Source of the DNA: Octopus sinensis
Taxonomy: Eukaryota
Reading direction: 5' to 3'
Assembly (NCBI RefSeq): GCF_006345805.1
Contig: NW_021833796.1
Location: forward strand, 1-57,926
Length of the DNA: 57,926 bases
This document shows positions 3,702-55,043 of this stretch, in pieces. The notes under the pieces were generated by a model. The model searched no databases, had not been told where the DNA came from, and saw only the letters and a list, made by a program, of their open reading frames with translations. A program made the position numbers and the translations under genes. Every line of letters starts with the position of its first letter. The stretch's first letter is position 1.

Positions 3702-4895
3702 ATAGTTCTTGTTAAAAGGCTTGTTTAATTACGAGATAATTGTGCACTTGTCACAATCTCAGAAACTTTTAATCAGAAATAACTAATCATCTTTATTTTA
3801 TCAACAGAAAAGTTAGTGACAGAGAGAATTTGCAAGAAAATTAGTTTGCCCAGCCCTCTACTTTTCATTTCTACATTGCAAAGAAATGTAACAGAAGTAG
3901 GAGAAAAACAAATGCAAGAATCAGAATAGTTTTCCTACTGTCTTTTGGATAAATTATTATATTTTAATTTTTAAATATTGTGGAATTTTTATGCTTTAGA
4001 TTTGGTTATGGGGTTTTGGAAGTATGGTCTTGTACTATAGACACAGTTTCACAGCAAATTCAGTCACTACTGAGTCTGTGGTGAAACTAGGTTTAAAATA
4101 CTGTTGAAAACAAATTAACTGCAGCCCTAATCTTATCATTGGCCCCATGCCACATGCAAAAACATTAGGTTTTCAATACTTTCAGACCTATCATCAAAAG
4201 TGTTTTTACTGTGACCATCAAATTTTTTTTCTATATTTAGAAAGAGATTTTTCAATGCATTCTTTATGACTTTAGGATACTGGAGTATTATTTTAATGGA
4301 AATTGGTTGATAATTGTAACACATCAATCAAACACATAGAGATTCTATATCTTTAGAATGTATTAATTACAGTAGCTTTATATGCCCAGCATGGGAAGGG
4401 CAGTATGAAGATAAACCTACATAATAGGCATACAAACATGTTAAATTTACCTACTCCTTCATCTGTAGACTGAAAAAATTATGGAAAACCTGGAATGATT
4501 CTTTACTCTTTTGAGAGTCTCATCAGATGCATCTCCATCACTTAATCAATCTCATATGCATTCAGGAATTTTGTATACTTCAAAGAACTACATCATCAAG
4601 AACAATAAGACTGAAAAGAACCACTAACTAGGGGTTTCATTGGCTAGAAATAATGGACAAATCTCTTTTTTGTATATGACTTTTATTAGCATAAGTAAAA
4701 AAGACTTCACTGGACAATGTTGGCCCCTAAGTAAAAAGCATACAAATAGATAGGGTAATCATAGGTGGAACATCTGTGAACATAAACCTGTTCAAAAGCA
4801 GCTTACCTGATACTTAGCAACAATAATAACAACAATAATTTAAACATTAGTTTATCACTATGTAAATGAGAAATCGTTAAGATACTTTTCAGCAA

Positions 4896-5081
4896 GGCGT
4901 AGGAGTGGCTGTGTGGTTAGTAACTTGCTTATGAACCACATGGTTCCAGGTTTAGTCCCACTGCATGGCACCTTGGGCAAGTGCCTTCTACTATAGCCTC
5001 AGGTCAACCAAAGCCTTGTTAGTGGATTTGGTAGATGGAAACTGAAAGAAGCCCGTCATATATATGTATGTATATATATAT

Positions 5082-5130
<49 letters not shown>

Positions 5131-5350
5131 GTGTATGTACTTGTGTGTCTATGTTTGTCCCCCCAACATCACTTGACAACCGATGCTGGTGAGTTTACAT
5201 CTCCATAACTTAGCAGTTCGGCTAAAGAGACAGATAGAATAAGTACTAGGCTTACAAAGAATAAGTCCTGGGGTCGATTTGCTCGACTAAAAAGGCTGTG
5301 CTCCAGCATGGCTACAGTCAAATGACTGAAGCAAGTAAAAGAGAGTAAAG
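4896..5350 (+). mobile_element. SINE family A, full length with expanded internal (TA)n
   Basis: GGCGTAGGAGTGGCTGTGTGG head through AGTAAAAGAGAGTAAAG tail. Confidence 0.93.
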
Positions 5351-5745
5351 ATTCATTTAAACACCGACTGTCTCTTTCTCATTTTCTCCTTCTTTTTCTC
5401 TCACTCTTGCCATCATAAGAGTTTATCAAATGATGTCTTTCAATAAGATTTCTATGAATACACTCTATCTATTTACACAGTTCCAAAAGGTGACAAATGA
5501 AAACTAACAATTACATTAAACTGGAGAATTGGCAAATATGAGACACACAGACAGTCAATGTGTTTAATAGTTCTTGCAGAAAGAACTGATTCAATTATTT
5601 GCTGTGTGATGAAGTTAGTAATCCTAAAGACATATTCATCAGACTAAATATCTTGCTGCATTTGGTCCAGTTCTTTAGATACTAAGTTCAAATCTGGTCA
5701 AGATCAACTTTGCTGTTGATTCTTTTTGAGGTTCATATATTGAAA

Positions 5746-6146
5746 TACTCTCTTTACTCTTTTACTCTTTTACTTGTTTCAGTCATTTGACTGTGGCCAT
5801 GCTGGAGCACTGCCTTTAGTCGAGCAAATCAACCCCAGGACTTATTCTTTGTAAGCCTAGTACTTATTCTATTGGTCTCTTTTGCCGAACCACTAAGTTA
5901 CGGGGATGTAAATACACCAGCATTGGTTATCAAGCGATGTTGGGGGACAAACACAGACACACATATATATACATATACATATACGACAGGCTTCTTTCAG
6001 TTTCTGTCTACCAAATCCACTCACAAGGCTTTGGTCGGCCCGAGGCTAGAGTAGAAGACACTTGCCCAAGGTGTCACGCAGTGGGACTGAACCCGTAACT
6101 ATGTGGTTTGTAAGCAAGCTACTTACCACACAGCCACTCATGCACC
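5746..6146 (-). mobile_element. SINE family A, full length
   Basis: Reverse complement of the family A head, core and tail. Confidence 0.93.
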
Positions 6147-6164
6147 TTTATCAATAAGGTTATT

Positions 6165-6900: not shown

Positions 6901-7902
6901 AAAGCCACACACATATCTATATTCATGGATATATATTATATACCAGTCCAGAAATTTGGAAATTTCTGAAAATGTTAGGGTATTGGACAAAATATTTTGT
7001 GGTATTTGCTTGGGCTCTCATGTTTTAAGTGCTGAGTCAGTTGTTGCAAAATTGTATCTAGCTGAAAATATAACCAAAAGAATGCAATAGGCAACTGCCT
7101 TTATATTCTCCCCTAAAAATTCTTTAACAAGCACAAAGCCATTGTCAATGTTGTCAGAATTATTTAAGTGATTTTGCTGTATGGTGTTCACCTAAATTTT
7201 ATCACTCATTTATTGACATTATTTGCACCAATGTGTTTGTTGTTTACTAAAAGATGAAGTTTTAGAATACTAGAACCATCAAAAAGAATCAAAACCAGTC
7301 ATATCTGTATTCTTACATTACCAAAGTTTATTGGACTAGGAAAAAGACTTATAATATTTGAAAACTAATAGAATATTCAAGTGAATGTTTTGTAGTGTAA
7401 AGTTTGTTTTGTTTTGAGATCAATATTGAAACTATATGATTGCAATGTAAGCAAGTTAACCACACAGACATATCTGGACCAAATTTTGAGAAATAAAATG
7501 AGTTATGAAAATCCAAAGTACTTTGCAGTAGATGTAGAAAAGATAGGCAGAAGAAATATAATATCTATGAGCCAGTGGCTGCAGTTGTGTTAGGCTGTGT
7601 GACTTTCTCCAACAGCAGAATAACAAGACTATTATGTGTAAGAACAGTATTATCACAAGTATGTGGAGCATACCCATGATTCATACATATGTACAGGCAC
7701 ATAGTATACACACACATGCATATACATACATATATGTATATGTATTTATGCCTGTGTGCATATATGTGAATATGTACATATATATATATATGTATGTATA
7801 TATCATTATCATTATTATTATTATCAAAGCTGCTGCAAAAAATCACAAAAAATCTGCCACTCAGAGTTTCACATTCCTATTCATCGGACAGTTGTGATTA
7901 TA

Positions 7903-15073: not shown

Positions 15074-15420
15074 GAAGCAGATGTAACAGTAACCATTGAT
15101 GATGACACAGCAAATAAGAAGAACTATATCGGACTGTGTTAAGGCGAATTAAAAACTCGCTATGATAATCACATATCTTTCTTCTGACACAGGGACGAAA
15201 GTAAAGCTACTGGGTTGGTTAGCTACTAATGGGGTTTGACGTCGGACGCCACACCACATAAGATAAAGTGGAAAATAGTCGAAAAATCCACACAACATGT
15301 TAACGGATAAAAAAAAACTGTAAGCTATGCGTAGCTGAAAGAACTCAGACCTTTTTCCGATCTAAGAACTCTAACTCACTGCAGAATTCTAGATCCCAAA
15401 TTATCAGTGGTTGTAAGCAT
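15074..15420 (+). pseudogene. Penelope-like element GIY-YIG endonuclease relic
   Basis: With frameshifts and stops: EADVTVT..KKNYIGLC-GELKTRYDNHISFF*H..KATGLVSY*W..HKIKWKIVEKS..CKLCVAER..NSRSQIISGCKH; matches the PLE EN pattern YIG..F/LK.RY.NH, CNLC and C.H. Confidence 0.85.
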
Positions 15421-15424
15421 ATAT

Positions 15425-15732
15425 ATTTATATTTTTATTTTTTATTTATGCGCCCTTTTCAAGCCTAGCTAGGCTTATGGGCCCGGTTTCCCAGTTTCTG
15501 TGGCGTATGTGTTCCCCCAGCTGGACGGGACGCCAGTCCATCGCAGCGTTACTCAAGAAACAGGAAAAAACAGTGAGAGAAAGTTGGGGTGAAAGAGTAC
15601 AACAGGGGTCGCCACCACCCCCTGCCGGAACCCTGTGGAGCTTTCAGGTGTTTTCGCTCAATAAACACACACAACGCCCGGTCTGGGAATCGAAACCGCG
15701 ATCCATGACCGCGAGTCCGTAACCCTAACCAC
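15425..15732 (-). mobile_element. tRNA-derived SINE family C
   Basis: Minus strand GTGGTTAGGGT..GGTTTCGATTCCCAGACC (A/B-box-like) head, distinct body, (TAAA)-like tail next to the PLE relic. Confidence 0.8.
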
Positions 15733-34028: not shown

Positions 34029-34135
34029 GCTGCGTGGCAACTCGGGCAAGTGTCTTCTACTATAGCCTCGGGCCGACCAAAGCCTTGTGAGTGGATTTGG
34101 TAGATGGAAACTGAAAGAAGCCCGTCGTATATATG

Positions 34136-34170
<35 letters not shown>

Positions 34171-34393
34171 TTGTGGTCTGTGTTTGTTCCCCCAACATTG
34201 CTTGACAACTGCCGCTGTTGTATTTACGACCCCGTAAATTAGCGGTTCGGGAAAAGAAACCGATAGAATAAGTACTAGGCTTACAAAGAATAAGTCCTGA
34301 GGTCGATTTGCTCGACTAAACGGTGGTGTTCCAGCATGGCCACAGTCAAATAACTGAAACAATTAAAAGAGTAAAAAGAGTAAAAAGAGAGTA
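34029..34393 (+). mobile_element. SINE family A, 5'-truncated
   Basis: CGGGCAAGTGTCTTCTACTATAGCCTCGGGCCGACC.. to (GAGTAAAAA)n tail. Confidence 0.9.
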
Positions 34394-34479
34394 TCATGAT
34401 GGTTTAATCCGGGTATCAAAATGTCGACATCGTGGCTACTCAATCTTCTGTGAACACTGTAAAGTCTGTAAGATGTAAC

Positions 34480-34978
34480 ATGAATATCAGGAATCCAAGT
34501 TCTTCCGAAGCGAGATAGTCATTGAGAGTGTTTCCAGTGAGGGTAACGTCATAGCACCCCACATCTTTGAGCAAGGCCTTAAGCTCAATTCAGACGGTTA
34601 TGTGAAGCTGCCAGAGACTGAAGTCAAACACTTGCAACAGGGGATAGCTATTGGAAGGCTATATGCGAGGCAGCAGGATTAGACTCCTTACCATAAATCT
34701 GGAAAGAATCAAAACCGGTTTCCGGAGAATTTCTACAACTTCGCCAGCCCAAATTTCTGGCCTCCGATTTCCACGATTGTAATACCATGGATGAGTTTTT
34801 CTGAGTTGCTTTTGAGAAAGACACCAACCACTCTGCCTGAAACAGCAAGGTTAAGCTAGTGACCAAGATCAAGGAGGTGTTCGAAAATCATACAAGGGAC
34901 ACAGTGAGGAATACATGTGCCAGATTCCGGAACCGTCTTGAGGCCGCGGTGGTAGTTGAGGAAGGCTACTTCGAATAA
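34480..34978 (+). pseudogene. Tc1/mariner-superfamily DD37D (maT-like) transposase C-terminal relic
   Basis: VSSEGNVIAPHIFEQGLKLNSDGYVKL..QQD*TPYH..FWPP-(SP)DCNTMD..VAFEKDTN..CARFRNRLEAAVVVEEGYFE*. Confidence 0.85.
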
Positions 34979-35105
34979 AACTGTTATCTCCCAACCATAG
35001 ACTAGTTGATATTTTTTAATTCTTTAAAATACTTTTATTTGAGAATGGGATATTGTCTCTGTTTTCTTTTATTCAAACTGTTAGGTTTAGCCCTAATGCA
35101 TACTT

Positions 35106-35517
35106 TCTCTTTTACTCTTTTACTTGTTTCAGTTATTTGACTGTGGCCATGCTGGAGCGTCGCCTTTAGTCGAGCAAATCGACCCCAGGACTTATTCTTT
35201 GTAAGCCTAGTACTTATTCTATCGTTCTCTTTTGTCGAACCTCTAAGTTACGAGGTCGTAAACACACCAGCATCGGTTGTCAAGCGATGTTGGGCGGACA
35301 TACACAAGCACACAAACATATACACACACACATACATACATATATATACATATATACGACGGGCTTCTTTCCGTTTCCGTCTACCAAATCCACTCGCAAG
35401 GCTTTGGTCGGCCTGGGCTATAGTAGAAGACACTTGCCCAAGGTGCCACACAGTGGGACTGAACCCGGAACAATGTGGTTGGTAAGCAAGCTACTTACCA
35501 CACAGCCACTCCTACGC
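35106..35517 (-). mobile_element. SINE family A, full length, well preserved
   Basis: Reverse complement of complete head (GCGTAGGAGTGGCTGTGTGG), core and tail. Confidence 0.93.
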
Positions 35518-36352
35518 ACGTACATATTTATTTAGTCATTGCTATCTGGGATCATACTAAATATATATACACCGCTGAGAGGCATGATGCCGTGCTTTTT
35601 GTCTGGAGGAAAATATTTTCTTAGATTTTCCCCCAGTCAAAACAATATAAAAAATATACGTAGGAGAGAGGTGAACATTGTTTCAGTAATGAATCAAAAG
35701 AAAGATAGGCGCGATCCATCTAACCTAAATTTTGTCAGAGCCGTGGTGCAATCTGTCACCTATTAAGACAAATTTCTTGCTTTGATTTATAGCAAACAGT
35801 GAATGTTACTTTTATTTGTATTCCGGAAAGCTTATCGGAATGCAAATGAAACGGTGAGCAACGTTACGGAGAGAAACAAGTTCTTGATGTTTCCACTGAA
35901 GTCCTGAATGTATAGTTGCTCGCTGATGTCATCAATCTGTGACAAAATCTTTTTTTGTCGTTTTACATGTACTTTTACATCTGAACACAGTGATTTTCAG
36001 TTCAATTGCTACAGACTCCGCCAATATTCTTACTATATATGTAACACTATGCGTATATATATTATATATATATATATATATTATATATATATATATATAA
36101 TATATATATATATATATTATATATATATATATATACATATATAATAAATATTAGGGAATAAATCCAAACTTACAGGGAAAAATCAGATTTAGGATTGAAT
36201 CCAATTTTATAGTAAAATATTATATTATATTAAATTAGAGACAAAACCACTATTAGGCAAATCATATAATGAAAATCTTAAGCCAATACATAAGATTATT
36301 TATTTATATTATTTAAATATATAACAAAATTATTAAAAAAATATAATTAATA

Positions 36353-36420
36353 TAACACTACGATCGTTTCATGGCTGTTAATTTCTTTAATTTTCGAGTT
36401 ACAGTCATTCATCAGGTGGT
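36353..36420 (-). ncRNA. Minimal type I hammerhead ribozyme motif (left arm)
   Basis: Minus strand CAC-CTGATGA-ATG(A)CTGT..ACAG(C)CAT-GAAA-CGATCG-TA^GTG; predicted cut between 36359 and 36358. Confidence 0.8.
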
Positions 36421-36526
36421 TTAAATATTTATCCTGGCGAGGTTTAAACCTCGCCAAGATAAATATTTAAACCACCTGATGAATGACTGTAACTCGAAAA
36501 TTTACCTAGCCAAGTTAAATATTTAA

Positions 36527-36595
36527 ACCACCTGATGAATGACTGTAACTCGAAAATTTAAAGAAATTAACAGCCATGAAACGATCGTAGTGTTA
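36527..36595 (+). ncRNA. Minimal type I hammerhead ribozyme motif (right arm)
   Basis: CAC-CTGATGA(36532-36538)-stem II-GAAA(36578-36581)-CGATCG-TA^GTG; predicted cut after 36589. Confidence 0.8.
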
Positions 36596-36978
36596 TATTA
36601 ATTATATTTTTTTAATAATTTTGTTATATATTTAAATAATATAAATTAAATAATCTTATGTATTGGCTTAAGTTTTTCATTGTATGATTTGCCTAATAGT
36701 GGTTTTATCTCTAATTTAATATAATATATAATATATATTTTTTTAATTATAAATTAGGGTATCTACGAGATACCACCATGCTGAAAATAGCAGCCATGAT
36801 CTGACTCCTAAACCACCTTAATTGATCATATCGCAAACACGGAGAGAAAACAAAGAGGCAAGATGAAGCTAGTAAAAAATTACTGGATAATTCTAGATCC
36901 CGGATTTCTGATTTCGCATTTAGGAATGCTTTGCCTCCTCAGTAGAATACACACAGAAAAGAAACATAAATACATACA

Positions 36979-37496: not shown

Positions 37497-37720
37497 TAAA
37501 GATTCATATGTGCATGTTAAATTTCACTCCAATATTTCGAATTCCTAACTGTGTTTAACAACATCATTTGCAGAGAAACGTCTATCACCTAGTATAAAAC
37601 GAAAGGGACCGCCATTTCAAGCGAAATAGTAACCAGCCAGCAGCAGTCACATATGAATTCAATTTGGGTATCAACCATTTCTCCTTGATTATATATATAT
37701 ATATACACTTGTGTGTGTGT

Positions 37721-38054
37721 GTATAAAGTCACAAATTACTGAGAAATAGCTTGATTAAATTTTATTTAAGAATGACAAATTTGTAATATCAAGACAAATT
37801 GTTTCGTAATTTAAAAGCATGTAAATAATTTATATTATCATGTTTAATAATAAATAAATTACATGCATTATTTTAAAGGAATTTTGCATTTTGCATTAAT
37901 GCAGCCATGTAAGTAATATTTTTACTTTTAAATATGATAATATAAATTATTTACATGTATTTAAGTTACGAAACAATTTGTCATGATATTAGAATTTTTC
38001 TATTTTAACATGAAATTTCATCAAAGTATTTCTTAGTTAATTGTGACTTTATAC
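37721..38054. mobile_element. Foldback element, about 120-bp arms around a roughly 90-bp AT spacer
   Basis: GTATAAAGTCACAA.. / ..TTGTGACTTTATAC; inner arms GACAAATTGTTTCGTAA / TTACGAAACAATTTGTC; left end abuts (TG)n. Confidence 0.85.
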
Positions 38055-38138
38055 ATTCCTTGTCGTTTTCTCTTGTAGCGTATTATATATTCTATGGGTT
38101 TTATAGAATAATACATTAAAGAGGTTTTCTTATGAGTA

Positions 38139-52182: not shown

Positions 52183-52185
52183 CAC

Positions 52186-52597
52186 TTTTACTCTTTTACT
52201 TGTTTCAGTCATTTGACTACAGCCATGCTGGAGCAGCGCCTTTAGTCGAGCAAACTGACCCCAGGACTTATTCTTTGTAAGCCTAGTACTTATTCTATCG
52301 GTCTCTTTTGTCGAACCGCTAAGTTACGGGGACGTAAACACACCAGCATCGGTTGTCAAGCGATGCTGAGGGACATACAGAGACACAGACAGATAGACAC
52401 AGACACACACACATGTATATATATATATGTATACGACGGGCTTCTTTCAGTTTCCGTTTACCAAATCCACATACAAGGATTTGGTCGGCTCGAGGATATA
52501 GTAGAAGACACTTGCTCAAGGTGCGACGCAGTGGGACTGAATTCGGAACCATGTCGTTGGTAAGCAAGCTACTTACCACACAGCCACTCTTGCACCT
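52186..52597 (-). mobile_element. SINE family A inserted in a (GATA)n array
   Basis: Full head, core and tail; (GATA)n on both sides (52143-52182, 52598-52693). Confidence 0.93.
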
Positions 52598-52599
52598 AT

Positions 52600-52694
<95 letters not shown>

Positions 52695-52740
52695 CCAATA
52701 AAAGTAGAACAAATAAAAATGTACTCCATCCAGTGAGAGA

Positions 52741-52862
52741 TAAATACACAACCTAAAGAGTTACTAATAGTTTCGTGATTTTATGATACTTAAACAGGCA
52801 TATATATGAAATACGCCTGCAAGATTATATCTCCAAACAATCTTGCATGCTCTGAGTATGCG
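52741..52862 (-). mobile_element. Inverted PLE 3' terminal (pseudo-LTR-like) segment, homologous to 54372-54484
   Basis: Minus strand ..AAGATTGTTTGGAGATA..ATATGCCTGTTTAAGTATCATAAAATCACGAAACTATTAGTAACTCTTTAGGTTGTGT aligns with the plus strand 54372-54484. Confidence 0.85.
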
Positions 52863-52869
52863 TTATATA

Positions 52870-53074
52870 TAATACAGTTCTATATTTAAGAGATGAGGAA
52901 TTATGTACATCATTAACCTGATTTACATTTGACGGATATTTATCCTCATCCTGTTTGTTGTTAACACAATGTTTTGGCTGATATACCCTCCAGCCTTCAT
53001 CAGGTGTCTTGGGGAAATTTCGAACCTGTGTTCTCATTTCTAAGGTATTTTTCGATGTTGCTGTTGTTGTTGTT

Positions 53075-53160
<86 letters not shown>

Positions 53161-53280
53161 CATCATCATCATTATTATTACTACTATTATTATTATTACT
53201 ATTATTATTATTCAGGTCACTGTCTGGAATCGAACTCGGAATCTTGAGGTTAGTAGCCCGCGCTCTTAACAACTACGCCA
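52870..53280 (-). mobile_element. tRNA-headed, (AAT)n-containing, hammerhead-tailed short element, copy A
   Basis: Minus strand TGGCGTAGTTGTTAAG..GAGTTCGATTCC head, then repeats, then ACAC-CTGATGA-A-GGCTG..CAGCC-AAAA-CATT^GTGT (52964-53007). Confidence 0.88.
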
Positions 53281-53362
53281 CGGGCATATGGTGTAGTGGT
53301 TATTAGTGCGAGCTACTAACCCCAAAATTCCGAGTTCGATTCCAGACAGTGACCTGAATAAC

Positions 53363-53439
<77 letters not shown>

Positions 53440-53596
53440 CAACAACAACATCGATAAACACCTTAGGAATGAAAACTCGGGTTCGAAATTTCCCCAACAC
53501 ACCTGATGAAGGCCGGAGGGTATATCAGCCGAAACGTTGTTAACAACAAACAAGATGGGGACAAATATCCGTCAAATGTAAATAATGTAAATAATG
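53281..53596 (+). mobile_element. Same element, copy B (head-to-head with copy A)
   Basis: A-box TGGTGTAGTGG (53289-53299), B-box GTTCGATTCC (53334-53343), (AAT)n, then CTGATGA (53503-53509)-A-GGCCG..CAGCC-GAAA-CG-TT^GT. Confidence 0.9.
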
Positions 53597-53619
53597 TGCG
53601 TTATATACATTTTTTTAAA

Positions 53620-54159
53620 AGTAGATCAAAATATCATACAACTGCTTCCCAATGTGAAGAACATTATATCTCGTAAAAATCACCAAGAACCCACTCCCAT
53701 TTGTAATTGTCGAGACCCTAAAGCCTACCCACTTGACCTGGCTTCTAAGATAAACTCCGTTATATACGATACTGAAGTTACAGCAACGCTTCGAAATAAG
53801 TCAATTTAATAGAAGAATTATATCGGGCTAAGTGAGGGCGAATTCAAAAGACGTTATGCAAACCACCTGTCTTCTTTTCGTCACATCAATAAAAGTAATG
53901 CAACTAAGTTGGCTAGCCACATATGGAATTTTAATAGCGGCCCCACACTGCATACAATTAAGTAGAGAATAATGGAGAGTCTAAGACATATGTTAAAGGA
54001 TCTAAGAAATGCAACTTATGTGTAACAGAAAGATCTCATACTCTTCTTAGATCCATCAATTCCAACACACTGCTTAATTCCAGATCTGAAATTTGTAGGT
54101 GTAACCACATGGACAGGTTTCTTTTATCGAATTGGAGCGCACCACCCGCTCCAGATTGA
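53620..54159 (+). pseudogene. Penelope-like element linker plus GIY-YIG endonuclease relic with natural stop
   Basis: PNVKNIIS..CNCRDPKAYPLD..SVIYDTEVT..**KNYIGLSEGEFKRRYANHLSSFRH..KLASHIW..-SKKCNLCVTER..LLNSRSEICRCNHMDRFLLSNWSAPPAPD*. Confidence 0.92.
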
Positions 54160-54484
54160 TTTACTGTCTAACAGACTTTGACATATATTCTATTGTTTTG
54201 TTCAATACCAGTTGTATTTAATGTGCTTTCTGCAATCAGGGAGGATGAGGATCTTAGTTTTCTTCATTTCGTTTTTACTCGATCCTGTTTTTTTTTTGTT
54301 TTTTTTGCACTCTTCTCACGTTTTTACTTTTTTTTCTTTATTTTCTCACTGTCCATTAAAGTATATTTAATGCATAAACAGAGTCTGAAAGATTGCTTGG
54401 AGATACATGTTGTATTTTATAAATATGCCTGTTCAAGTATCATAAAAGCATGAAACTATTTATAGCTCTTTCGGTTGTGTAATT
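54160..54484 (+). mobile_element. PLE 3' UTR / pseudo-LTR with decayed hammerhead-like motif
   Basis: AGAGT-CTGAAAGA..AAGCAT-GAAA-CTATTTATAGCTCT; homologous to 52741-52862. Confidence 0.7.
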
Positions 54485-55043
54485 AATTTAAATATATATA
54501 TAGCCGGAATAAATAGCATACAATTTTTTATGAGCGCACCCAAAAGCTTTTTATGTAAATGGACTTGAAGTGTATATATATATATGTGTGTGTTTGTGTA
54601 TTTATTTATTTATTTATATAGATGTTAGCCTTCAAAGTTCGGATCGGGCATCGAAAGCAATAATCTATCCAGGTTTGGACAACAATAATAAAAATTATTA
54701 ACAATACACATCTGCTTCTTTCTCAGTTTTTCAACTCTTAGACTTCTTTTGGCCATGCTTATTTCTCTTTCGAGAGTTATAAGGATAATGTTTTAGAATC
54801 TTTTTGTAAAATACATAACCTTGACCAGAACACTAGACTACAGATTTAGTTTGTATCATAATCACAAACTCTTGAGCCCTAAAATTGCAATAGTGATGTT
54901 CTACAAGCACCTAAAAGATAGGATGGTCAATAGCATTGAAAGTATAAAACTGTAGTTTTAATATGTTTAGGGGACATTAAAAGATTAACTACAGTTACCA
55001 GGAAAATGGCAACGCACTGCTTTCAGAGAAACAACATTAATAA

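What the first reader, a model, noticed from the sequence alone, without database searches (positions are those of the whole stretch)
52741..54484. Nested 'palindrome inside a palindrome': a short-element dimer inserted at the inversion junction of a Penelope-like element
Seen: inverted PLE 3' end (52741-52862, minus), then TGCGTTATATA (52859-52869), a head-to-head dimer of a short element (52870-53596), TGCGTTATATA again (53597-53607), then the PLE EN relic and the same 3' end on plus. Established: PLE insertions are often 5'-truncated copies preceded by an inverted pseudo-LTR. Inference: the 11-bp direct repeat is a target-site duplication, so the dimer integrated as one unit exactly at the PLE inversion junction. 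That may reflect targeting or co-mobilisation by PLE machinery.
Basis: partly seen in the sequence, partly recalled or inferred. Interest (0 to 1): 0.85.

Follow-up and report, generated by a model that had tools for sequence, protein, structure and literature searches.

The report
SINE dimer nested in PLE relic
An old, broken Penelope-like retrotransposon (Hydra clade) was later hit, right next to its internal inversion point, by one insertion that laid down two copies of a short tRNA-promoter-type retroposon head-to-head; the layout resembles what Penelope-type enzymes produce, but this is one locus and the link to that machinery is unproven.

Summary
An inverted 130-bp copy of a PLE 3' end (52740-52869, minus) pairs with 54358-54486 (83% identity). 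TGCGTTATATA occurs exactly twice in the window (52859, 53597) and brackets a 727-bp head-to-head palindrome. The left 11-mer aligns with the partner PLE arm, so it is target sequence, not element tail. This supports a target-site duplication and a single integration event.

The "PLE" is a 5'-truncated relic of the Hydra clade (CxCX5C linker, no CCHH, CxxC/CxH). Its protein homology begins about 10 bp after the right 11-mer, so the insertion lies at most 12 bp from the inversion junction.

The short element has pol III A/B-box-like motifs, an internal (AAT)n and an (ATGTAAATA)n tail. The arms are 88.6% identical, with an 8-nt centre and 37 extra nt on one arm only.

The same layout (TSD, one-sided extension, heads in, tails out) occurs in a genuine Hydra PLE from another animal (L005), and apparently (its TSD is only 6-7 nt) in a hammerhead-bearing short element at 36206-36753. 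This fits published PLE biochemistry.

Against PLE mobilisation: no 3' homology to any PLE examined, a hammerhead-like motif that fails a covariance-model test, and no other genomic copies available.

Verdict: nested insertion confirmed; PLE mobilisation plausible (about 0.4) but unproven.

The parts
52740..52869 (-). Inverted, 5'-truncated copy of the PLE 3' end (left arm of the outer inverted repeat). Its inner 11 bp are the target that was duplicated.
   Evidence: Matches 54358-54486 on the opposite strand: 79% with gaps, 83% ungapped, K2P 0.19.
52859..52869 (+). Target-site duplication, left copy (TGCGTTATATA). It is part of the inverted PLE arm.
   Evidence: Exact 11-mer that occurs only twice in the window. 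It aligns with TGCATTAAATA of the partner arm at about 54364-54374.
52870..52906 (-). One-sided 37-nt extension at the 3' end of the left monomer, with no counterpart on the right arm.
   Evidence: Arm-versus-arm alignment. Similarity to the PLE 3' UTR is not significant (p 0.28). Comparable one-sided extensions occur in L005 (about 60 nt) and at 36159-36205 (47 nt).
52907..53280 (-). Left monomer of the SINE-like element. It comprises about 3 tail units of ATGTAAATA, a body (to 53066), an (AAC/AAG/AAT)n microsatellite (about 53063-53212) and a head with B box 53226-53236 and A box 53270-53280.
   Evidence: the repeat finder I1/I2/I24, alignment, motif positions.
53281..53288 (.). 8-nt centre of the palindrome (ACGGGCAT), not self-complementary. 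It corresponds to the 7-8 nt that precede the A box, present once, so only one monomer can own it.
53289..53596 (+). Right monomer of the SINE-like element. It comprises A box 53289-53299, B box 53333-53343, (AAT)n(AAC)n at about 53355-53450, a body at 53440-53575 and the tail (ATGTAAATA)2ATG at 53576-53596.
   Evidence: The head profile gives weak hits to eight other SINE-like heads in the window (best E 0.002).
53597..53607 (+). Target-site duplication, right copy (TGCGTTATATA).
53608..54159 (+). 5'-truncated PLE body. It is a relic of the C-terminal about 170 residues (linker CxCX5C plus GIY-YIG-type EN), with 4 in-frame stops and one frameshift. The stop codon is at 54157-54159.
   Evidence: Translation. 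There are 1626 homologues. tblastn with full-length Hydra-type proteins covers residues about 537-705. Alignment A1.
54160..54486 (+). PLE 3' UTR. The last about 129 bp (54358-54486) form the right arm of the outer inverted repeat. It is followed by (TA)5.

Best explanation
There were two successive retrotransposition events.

Event 1 (older). A Hydra-clade Penelope-like element inserted as the usual PLE composite. It consists of a 5'-truncated plus-strand copy (EN relic plus 3' UTR, 53608-54486) joined head-to-head to an inverted 130-bp copy of its own 3' end (52740-52869).

Event 2 (later). A staggered cut was made 11 bp apart in the TA-rich inner end of the inverted arm (...GTA^TGCGTTATATA^CAT...), at most 12 bp from the arm/copy junction. 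Reverse transcripts of a roughly 310-410-nt SINE-like RNA were laid down from both sides. This RNA has a pol III A/B-box head, an internal (AAT)n and an (ATGTAAATA)n tail. Either each nicked strand primed its own cDNA, or the first cDNA reached the 5' end of the RNA, snapped back and copied itself. Both routes give two full-length copies with heads abutting (8-nt centre) and tails outwards, one 11-bp target-site duplication, and a 37-nt longer tail on one arm because reverse transcription started at two different points.

Shown here: the anatomy, the duplication, the PLE clade, and the nesting.

Inferred: the one-step origin of the dimer (about 0.75).

More weakly inferred (about 0.4): that the enzyme was a PLE RT-EN rather than a LINE enzyme. 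This rests on the layout matching PLE insertion signatures.
For: Anatomy and duplication:
- The 11-mer is exact, occurs only twice, and lies at the two boundaries.
- Its left copy is homologous to the partner PLE arm, so it is target DNA.
- Neither monomer has a flanking repeat of its own.
- Inner arms have K2P 0.12 against 0.19 for the PLE arms. This fits a later insertion, though the difference is not significant (p 0.14).

PLE identity:
- The EN relic has 1626 homologues.
- Full-length relatives of about 700 aa carry RWK, DKT/DKS, YRDDG, a CxCX5C linker, no CCHH, and CxxC plus CxH. These are the features listed for Hydra in PMC8557442.

PLE-type layout in the literature:
- PMC8557442 describes inverted 5'-truncated copies and a 30-40-bp tail, often at one end only.
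- PMC11167929 shows that a PLE protein cleaves and extends both strands, starts reverse transcription at two internal sites that define the tail, and prefers AT-rich targets including its own pLTR.

Independent comparators found here:
- L005, a Hydra PLE in another animal, is a 1879-nt-arm palindrome with 0-nt spacer and an 18-nt TSD (one mismatch). It has a roughly 60-nt extension on one side only.
- Window 36206-36753 is a hammerhead-bearing short element in the same heads-in, tails-out palindrome, with a 47-nt one-sided extension. Its candidate TSD is only 6-7 nt.

Against L1-type twin priming: it is seen in only 0.02% of 5936 germline Alu insertions, and its two cDNAs overlap by a median of only 12 bp (PMC12016303).
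Against: - Only one instance is available. No other copy of the element or of this PLE family exists in the window.
- The host genome could not be searched.
- The element's 3' part has no significant similarity to this PLE, to L001, or to the L004/L005 3' ends. The best of 10 comparisons gave p 0.03.
- Its CUGAUGA-N21-GAAAC motif is not recognised as a hammerhead by Rfam. With a model built from five Hydra-PLE hammerheads, the left arm scores 9.4 bits (E 4.3) and the right arm is not listed. That model does find the held-out positives L009, L007 and L010.
- A pol III head and a short tandem-repeat tail are the classic marks of LINE-dependent SINEs.
- The tRNA-like fold is poor. ARAGORN finds it only at a 70% threshold and Rfam tRNA does not hit.
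- Whether the 37 nt derive from the element cannot be told from one copy.
Confidence: 0.6

Rival explanations
1. Same single-event retro-integration, but carried out by a LINE enzyme (a CR1/L2/RTE-type partner of a stringent SINE). Both target strands would have primed on SINE RNA, or the cDNA self-primed at the RNA 5' end. The position in a PLE relic would be coincidence.
For: The element has a pol III A/B-box head, a body and a 9-mer tandem tail (ATGTAAATA)2-3, as in LINE-dependent SINEs. There is no PLE 3' homology and no hammerhead. CR1, RTE and other LINEs are reported active in octopus (PMC13282606). That the window is octopod is my recollection only.
Against: Inverted structures are very rare for L1-mobilised SINEs (0.02% of Alu). 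Twin priming gives adjacent, barely overlapping segments, not two full-length copies. No LINE fragment with a matching 3' end is present in the window. The one-sided 37-nt extension has no standard LINE explanation.
Confidence: 0.22
2. A single monomer inserted with the 11-bp TSD. Later a replication template switch or fold-back repair made an inverted duplicate of it in place, between the left TSD copy and the head.
For: The arms are of equal extent from an 8-nt non-palindromic centre, as expected for fold-back priming. The extra 37 nt could be filler.
Against: The duplication would have had to start and stop almost exactly at the element's two ends, leaving both TSD copies intact and adjacent. 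The same layout recurs in the unrelated Hydra PLE insertion L005, which has a flanking TSD. It recurs, with only a 6-7-nt candidate TSD, at 36206-36753. This points to an integration-linked process.
Confidence: 0.08
3. The 727-bp unit is a non-autonomous DNA transposon with long terminal inverted repeats (MULE-like or foldback-like). Those superfamilies give 9-11-bp TSDs.
For: It has an 11-bp TSD and roughly 350-bp inverted arms. Mutator families are reported in octopus. Another tight palindrome at 37720-38055, flanked by TA, looks MITE-like.
Against: The termini are not inverted repeats of each other (TAATACAG... versus ...AATAATG), because of the 37-nt asymmetry. The arms carry A/B boxes with 44-nt spacing at their inner ends, an internal microsatellite and a tandem-repeat tail at their outer ends. 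That is retroposon anatomy.
Confidence: 0.05
4. Two independent insertions of the same family that happen to abut, or an assembly artefact (a fold-back chimeric read).
For: SINEs are very dense in this window, and tail-to-tail pairs of another family occur at 4894-6148 and 34030-35453.
Against: The second insertion would have to land within 8 bp of the first one's 5' end and leave no TSD of its own. The other inverted pairs are 400-730 bp apart and have no shared TSD. An artefact would give near-identical arms, but these differ by 11% and in their microsatellites.
Confidence: 0.04

Closest known systems
Hydra clade of C-terminal EN+ Penelope-like elements (Craig et al. 2021, PMC8557442)
   Same: The outer relic encodes the Hydra-type C-terminus: a CxCX5C linker, a GIY-YIG-type core without CCHH, and CxxC and CxH around the conserved E and N. 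Full-length relatives are about 700 aa with RWK and DKT motifs. The relic shows an inverted 5'-truncated copy, and (TA)n lies at the 3' flank.
   Different: This copy keeps only about 170 C-terminal residues, with stops and a frameshift. No hammerhead is detectable in its 3' UTR, whereas relatives L004-L011 have clear type-I hammerheads.
PLE composite insertions with inverted arms and a one-sided 'tail' (PMC8557442; biochemistry in Frangieh et al. 2024, PMC11167929)
   Same: The inner dimer has 3' ends out and 5' ends in, a TSD, a 37-nt extension on one arm only, and an AT-rich target inside a PLE 3' UTR. L005 shows the same layout for a genuine Hydra PLE.
   Different: The inserted unit has no PLE coding or detectable PLE 3' sequence. 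It carries a pol III-type head. Both arms are full length rather than 5'-truncated.
Animal non-LTR retrozymes and hammerhead-bearing SINE-like elements proposed to depend on PLEs (bioRxiv 10.64898/2026.07.22.740005; Schistosoma Sm-alpha, from memory)
   Same: It is a short non-coding element that may borrow PLE machinery. A CUGAUGA...GAAAC motif sits about 60 nt from the 3' end, as in the L005 PLE.
   Different: The motif fails both Rfam and a Hydra-hammerhead covariance model. The copies are arranged as an inverted pair, not a tandem array. The true hammerhead-bearing short element in this window is a different sequence (36206-36753).
tRNA-derived SINEs mobilised by LINEs, and L1 twin priming
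   Same: It has A and B boxes with tRNA-gene spacing, a short non-coding body, a tandem-repeat tail and a TSD of LINE-like length.
   Different: The head-to-head duplication of the whole element under a single TSD is not what twin priming produces and is extremely rare for Alu. No partner LINE was identified.

Membership tests
Penelope-like element, Hydra clade (outer relic) | C-terminal GIY-YIG-type endonuclease downstream of a PLE reverse transcriptase | tested here: met
   The relic aligns to the C-terminal about 170 residues of proteins of about 700 aa. Their upstream parts carry RT motifs (FDI..FYPSI, YRDDG, FLDVTL). The RT part itself is absent from this truncated copy. Pfam GIY-YIG reaches only E 0.0057 on relative P0159 and gives nothing on the relic.
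Penelope-like element, Hydra clade (outer relic) | CxCX5C linker; no CCHH inside the GIY-YIG core; CxxC and CxH flanking the conserved E and N | tested here: met
   The relic reads CNCRDPKAY (third Cys changed to Tyr; relatives have Cys), CNLC..E, and LNSRSEICRCNH. The definition is from PMC8557442.
Penelope-like element, Hydra clade (outer relic) | Canonical hammerhead ribozyme in the pLTR / 3' region | tested here: not met
   No Rfam hit. No hit from model R1 in 54160-54486 or 52740-52869 at E up to 10. Relatives L004, L005, L006, L007, L008, L009, L010 and L011 do have one. Decay of an old copy is a sufficient explanation.
Penelope-like element, Hydra clade (outer relic) | Inverted 5'-truncated copy and insertion at (TA)n | tested here: met
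   Inverted 130-bp 3' end. (TA)5 lies just past the 3' end at about 54495-54506. No TA tract on the left flank and no TSD was found for the composite.
tRNA-derived SINE (inner monomer) | Internal pol III promoter: A box and B box at tRNA-gene spacing near the 5' end | tested here: met
   TGGTGTAGTGG at 53289-53299 and AGTTCGATTCC at 53333-53343, each 10/11 to consensus, with 44 nt start to start. They are mirrored on the left arm at 53270-53280 and 53226-53236. The consensus sequences are from memory.
tRNA-derived SINE (inner monomer) | Recognisable tRNA-like sequence or fold in the head | tested here: inconclusive
   ARAGORN default gives none and only a poor cloverleaf at a 70% threshold. 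There is no Rfam tRNA hit. The head profile gives weak hits (E 0.002-0.5) to eight other SINE-like heads in the window.
tRNA-derived SINE (inner monomer) | Many dispersed genomic copies, mostly monomers with TSDs | not testable with these tools
   No further copy in the window. The metagenome, viral and prokaryote collections gave nothing relevant. Window ORFs are not on record.
PLE-dependent non-autonomous element / retrozyme (inner monomer) | Hammerhead ribozyme | tested here: not met
   CUGAUGA-N21-GAAAC at 53503-53535. Rfam shows nothing at E up to 10, even on the 171-nt stretch. Model R1 gives 9.4 bits, E 4.3, on the left arm and does not list the right arm.
PLE-dependent non-autonomous element / retrozyme (inner monomer) | 3' region homologous to a PLE 3' end / pLTR | tested here: not met
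   blastn and shuffled local alignments against the window PLE arms, L001, L004 and L005 gave a best p of 0.03 in 10 tests. An 18-mer of the tail matches the PLE terminus plus flank at 15/18, which is too AT-rich to count. PLEs of the host genome could not be surveyed.
PLE-dependent non-autonomous element / retrozyme (inner monomer) | PLE insertion signature: tandem or inverted copies with 3' ends out, an optional 30-40-bp tail at one end, an AT/TA-rich target | tested here: met
   Definition. The same layout is seen in L005 and at 36206-36753.
TIR DNA transposon (MULE-like or foldback MITE) | Inverted repeats that reach both termini, directly flanked by the TSD | tested here: not met
   The termini TAATACAGTTC... 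and ...GTAAATAATG are not complementary. The left arm has 37 unmatched nt.
L1-type twin priming product | The inverted 5' segment comes from a more upstream part of the same RNA, with little or no overlap with the 3' segment | tested here: not met
   Both arms cover the same full-length sequence, head to tail. Typical overlap in twin priming is a median of 12 bp.

The most novel reading that the evidence does not exclude
A pol III (tRNA-type) SINE in a cephalopod-like genome is mobilised by a Hydra-clade Penelope-like RT-EN rather than by a LINE. Because that enzyme primes from both cut strands at two alternative start sites, the SINE integrates as head-to-head palindromic dimers with a one-sided tail, preferentially at TA-rich sites that include PLE 3' regions. 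This would be a SINE-PLE partnership of a kind not described in the literature I could search.
Probability: 0.3. Interest if true: 0.75.

Novelty: new variant of a known kind. Interest (0 to 1): 0.5.

Why it matters
Penelope-like elements are the least understood class of retrotransposons. Their inverted and tandem insertion structures and their "tail" were explained biochemically only in 2024. Their non-autonomous passengers in animals (retrozymes) are only now being tied to them.

A SINE with a pol III head that integrates in PLE style would extend the SINE/LINE partnership idea to PLEs. It would also give a compact natural substrate for studying two-strand priming.

Such insertions create long hairpin-forming palindromes, which can be fragile sites and sources of double-stranded RNA. 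This window holds three tight palindromes in 58 kb.

If the census shows ordinary monomers and a LINE partner, this locus is merely an unusual one-off nested insertion.

Tried and rejected
1. Hammerhead in the short element. The CUGAUGA-N21-GAAAC motif followed by UAACAACAAA resembles the L005 PLE hammerhead region. Rfam finds nothing. A covariance model built from five Hydra-PLE hammerheads scores it at background level, while recovering the held-out L009, L007 and L010. Rejected as evidence.

2. Homology between the element's 3' part and PLE 3' ends. Not significant.

3. The 37-nt extension as a continuation of the inverted PLE arm. There is a collinear but weak match (p 0.28 unrestricted). 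Not adopted.

4. A 14/15 direct repeat (52699-52713 and 53616-53630) as a sign of a different history. The extended alignment gives p about 0.03. Left unexplained.

5. More copies from public data. Exact-pattern scans of the metagenome, viral and prokaryote collections found nothing relevant. The literature text search for the sequences was empty. Look-ups of window ORFs spanning both junctions were not on record. The word-indexed protein search failed on the degraded relic. The closest PLE relative, P0001, sits on a single 1.9-kb Logan contig, L001, with 71% DNA identity.

6. A tRNA call for the head. None at normal thresholds.

7. MITE, twin priming, independent insertions and assembly artefact. 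See the rival explanations.

8. Age ordering. PLE arms have K2P 0.19 and dimer arms 0.12. The direction is as expected for nesting, but the difference is not significant (p 0.14).

9. The organism. Two neighbouring repeats (52183-52360 and 52430-52600) look to me like abundant octopus SINEs. This is recollection only and no tool confirmed it.
Full report
**What is in the sequence**

From left to right the region holds the following parts.
- A 130-bp segment, 52740-52869. It is the reverse complement of 54358-54486: 79% over 129-131 columns with gaps, 83% ungapped, K2P 0.19.
- TGCGTTATATA at 52859-52869.
- A palindrome running to 53596.
- TGCGTTATATA again at 53597-53607.
- A degraded reading frame, 53618-54159.
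- A 3' UTR that ends in the right arm of the outer repeat.

The 11-mer occurs only at those two places in the 57,926 bases and never on the other strand. Neither the short element nor this PLE family has another copy in the window, by blastn with word size 9 or by nhmmer profiles.

**Is the 11-mer a target-site duplication?**

Three observations say yes.
- The left copy is part of the inverted PLE arm. In the arm-to-arm alignment it pairs, without a gap, with TGCATTAAATA of the right arm, and homology runs to 52869-52871.
- Chance is low. From the window's own frequency of non-simple 11-mer direct repeats at comparable spacing, 0.0125 are expected in a generous 60 x 20 box of possible boundaries. 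That background is inflated by real repeats. Base composition gives about 8e-4.
- Neither monomer has a flanking repeat of its own.

With the insert and one 11-mer removed, PLE-arm homology ends at the 11-mer, or at most 6 nt beyond it. Homology of the plus-strand copy to PLE proteins begins at about 53618-53630.

**What the outer element is**

The frame from 53591 reads ...ICNCRDPKAYPLD...SVIYDTEVT...KNYIGLSEGEFKRRYANHLSSF..., with four stops. It shifts frame near the end to give ...CNLCVTE...LNSRSEICRCNHMDRFLLSNWSAPPAPD*, with the stop at 54157-54159.

Pfam and the word-indexed search found nothing. An exhaustive HMMER search found 1626 homologues. A profile search retrieved full-length relatives of about 700 aa. 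Those carry RWK near the N-terminus, DKT/DKS, a divergent RT with YRDDG, the CxCX5C linker, a GIY-YIG-type core without the CCHH motif, and CxxC and CxH around the conserved E and N.

These are the features Craig et al. list for the Hydra clade of C-terminal EN+ PLEs, which are under 3 kb and insert into (TA)n (PMC8557442). The relic keeps only the last 170 or so residues (tblastn). (TA)5 follows its 3' end.

An inverted 5'-truncated copy next to a truncated copy is the standard PLE composite. No hammerhead is detectable in this old copy, although relatives have clear ones (see below).

**What the inner element is**

Aligned to each other, the two arms define a unit with these parts:
- a head with TGGTGTAGTGG and AGTTCGATTCC, 44 nt apart (A- and B-box-like, each 10/11);
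- a long (AAT)n/(AAC)n microsatellite;
- a body of about 135 nt;
- a tail of two to three ATGTAAATA units.

The arms are 88.6% identical outside the microsatellite (K2P 0.12). The A boxes face each other across 8 nt (ACGGGCAT, 53281-53288). This centre is not self-complementary and corresponds to the 7-8 nt that precede an A box in a tRNA gene. One monomer is therefore complete and the other lacks its first few bases, or the centre is a fold-back loop.

The left arm continues 37 nt (52870-52906) beyond the point where the right arm meets the 11-mer.

tRNA finders do not call the head at normal thresholds. The head profile weakly matches eight other SINE-like heads in the window. I read it as a pol III SINE-like retroposon. 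The tRNA origin is unproven.

**How the dimer arose**

The geometry is exactly what two-sided target-primed reverse transcription predicts.
- The top-strand 3'-OH at TATATA^ is followed by the antisense of the element, starting from its 3' tail.
- The bottom-strand 3'-OH, 11 nt to the left, is followed by the other copy's tail.
- Both copies run to the RNA 5' end and meet.
- A cDNA that snaps back at the 5' end and copies itself gives the same product.

Published work makes this a PLE trait. A purified PLE protein cleaves and extends both strands. It starts reverse transcription at two internal sites 30-40 nt apart, which explains the optional "tail" seen at one end of genomic copies. It also prefers AT-rich targets, including its own pLTR (PMC11167929; PMC8557442).

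L1-type twin priming does not fit. It joins different parts of one RNA with a median overlap of 12 bp, and it is seen in only 0.02% of 5936 germline Alu insertions (PMC12016303).

**Independent comparators found during the work**

Fetching DNA around Hydra-type proteins gave L005 (ENA ERZ25066847, not related to this window's genome).
- Two 5'-truncated PLE copies lie head-to-head as an almost perfect palindrome: 1879-nt arms, 0-nt spacer, one mismatch.
- They are flanked by an 18-nt direct repeat, ATT[G/A]TCATTTGAACATCA.
- About 60 nt of extra sequence lie between the left repeat and the left arm only.

Other loci show tandem arrays (L006) and convergent copies (L007).

Hydra-PLE hammerheads were found by pattern in L004, L005, L006, L007, L008, L009 and L011. 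A covariance model from five of them recovered the held-out L009 (E 8e-7), L007 (0.018) and L010 (0.028). In the window it also hit 7851-7894 (E 0.0014) and a pair at 36351-36422(-) and 36525-36597(+).

That pair belongs to a second tight palindrome, 36206-36753.
- Its arms are 95-98% complementary with a 0-nt spacer, heads in and tails out.
- It lies next to (TA)n.
- It has a possible (A)TTAGGG duplication and a 47-nt extension on one side only.

The layout "TSD, one-sided extension, arm, arm, TSD" is thus seen clearly in one bona fide PLE context (L005). It is seen less securely in a second (36206-36753, where the candidate TSD is only 6-7 nt). The finding's dimer matches it.

**What speaks against PLE mobilisation**

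- The element's 3' part has no significant similarity to the relic's arms, to the closest relative L001 (71% DNA identity to the relic), or to L004/L005. The best of ten comparisons gave p 0.03.
- The CUGAUGA-N21-GAAAC motif in its body, followed by UAACAACAAA as in L005, looked promising. Rfam finds nothing even on the 171-nt stretch. The Hydra hammerhead model gives 9.4 bits (E 4.3) for the left arm and does not list the right arm. I treat this motif as unsupported.
- A pol III head and a tandem-repeat tail are classic for LINE-dependent SINEs.
- The site preference rests on one event at a TTATATA motif.
- The age order (dimer arms K2P 0.12, PLE arms 0.19) agrees with nesting but is not significant (p 0.14).

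**What could not be done**

The host genome is not in the DNA collections. ORFs spanning the two junctions are not on record. My impression that the window is octopod comes from recollection of two neighbouring SINE sequences and is not verified.

**Verdict**

The outer element is a Hydra-clade PLE relic. The insertion is within 12 bp of its inversion junction.

Whether the junction was targeted, and whether PLE machinery did the work, is a reasonable inference from architecture (about 0.4). It failed the two sequence-based tests available.

The thing is best filed as a nested retroposon insertion with an unusual, PLE-like palindromic form. It is a new variant of a known kind, of moderate interest until a genome-wide census is made.

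Noticed in passing
window 36206-36753: A second tight palindrome. Arms 36206-36445(-) and 36446-36753(+) are 95-98% complementary with a 0-nt spacer. A 56-nt head segment is tandemly duplicated (36448-36503 and 36504-36559). Each arm carries a type-I hammerhead, ACCAC-CUGAUGA-...-GAAAC-GAUC-GUA|GUGUU (model R1, 15 bits, E about 0.07), with a palindromic loop III. It lies next to (TA)n. There is a possible (A)TTAGGG TSD and a 47-nt one-sided extension (36159-36205). It looks like a PLE-derived, retrozyme-like short element inserted PLE-style.
   Followed up: partly
window 37720-38055: A third tight palindrome, with 149-nt arms, 83% complementarity and a 38-nt spacer. It sits between (TA)n and (TG)n tracts. 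The termini TGTATAAAGTCACAA...TTGTGACTTTATACA are truly inverted, so it looks like a MITE rather than a retroposon dimer.
   Followed up: partly
window 7851-7894 (-): A degenerate Hydra-type hammerhead (CCGAUGA...GAAACUCUGAGU; model R1 20.7 bits, E 0.0014). It suggests another PLE 3' fragment.
   Followed up: no
window 15077-15453 (+): A second Hydra-clade PLE endonuclease relic of a different family. It has no DNA similarity to the 53.6-kb copy. It is interrupted at about 15420 by another repeat.
   Followed up: no
window 52699-52713 and 53616-53630: A 14/15 direct repeat, TAAAAGTAGA[A/T]CAAA. The sequence just left of the PLE composite resembles the first bases of the plus-strand PLE copy. 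The extended alignment gives p about 0.03. The meaning is unknown.
   Followed up: partly
L005 7946-11797 (ENA ERZ25066847, ctg1158): An almost perfect 3.76-kb palindrome of two identically truncated Hydra PLE copies with intact 538-aa ORFs. It has an 18-nt TSD and a roughly 60-nt one-sided extension. The identical truncation point and 0-nt spacer favour a snap-back or template-switch origin over two independent primings.
   Followed up: partly
L004, L005, L006, L007, L008, L009, L010, L011: Hydra-clade PLE hammerheads share the form stem I - CUGANGA - short stem II - GAAAC - 5-6-nt loop - GUA/GUC. They fall below Rfam gathering scores in L001, L004 and L005, so standard annotation misses them. 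L006 is a tandem array and L007 a convergent pair.
   Followed up: partly
window 54477-54494 versus 53576-53593: The element's tail, ATGTAAATAATGTAAATA, matches the PLE 3' terminus plus flank, GTGTAATTAATTTAAATA, at 15/18. Seven such matches occur in the window against 1.2 expected. The sequence is AT-rich, so the weight is low, but it is the only hint of shared 3' ends.
   Followed up: no
window 4894-6148 and 34030-35453: Two tail-to-tail inverted pairs of an abundant SINE-like repeat (87-89% identical, 400-730 bp apart) without a shared TSD. These are ordinary independent insertions and serve as a contrast to the abutting dimer.
   Followed up: yes
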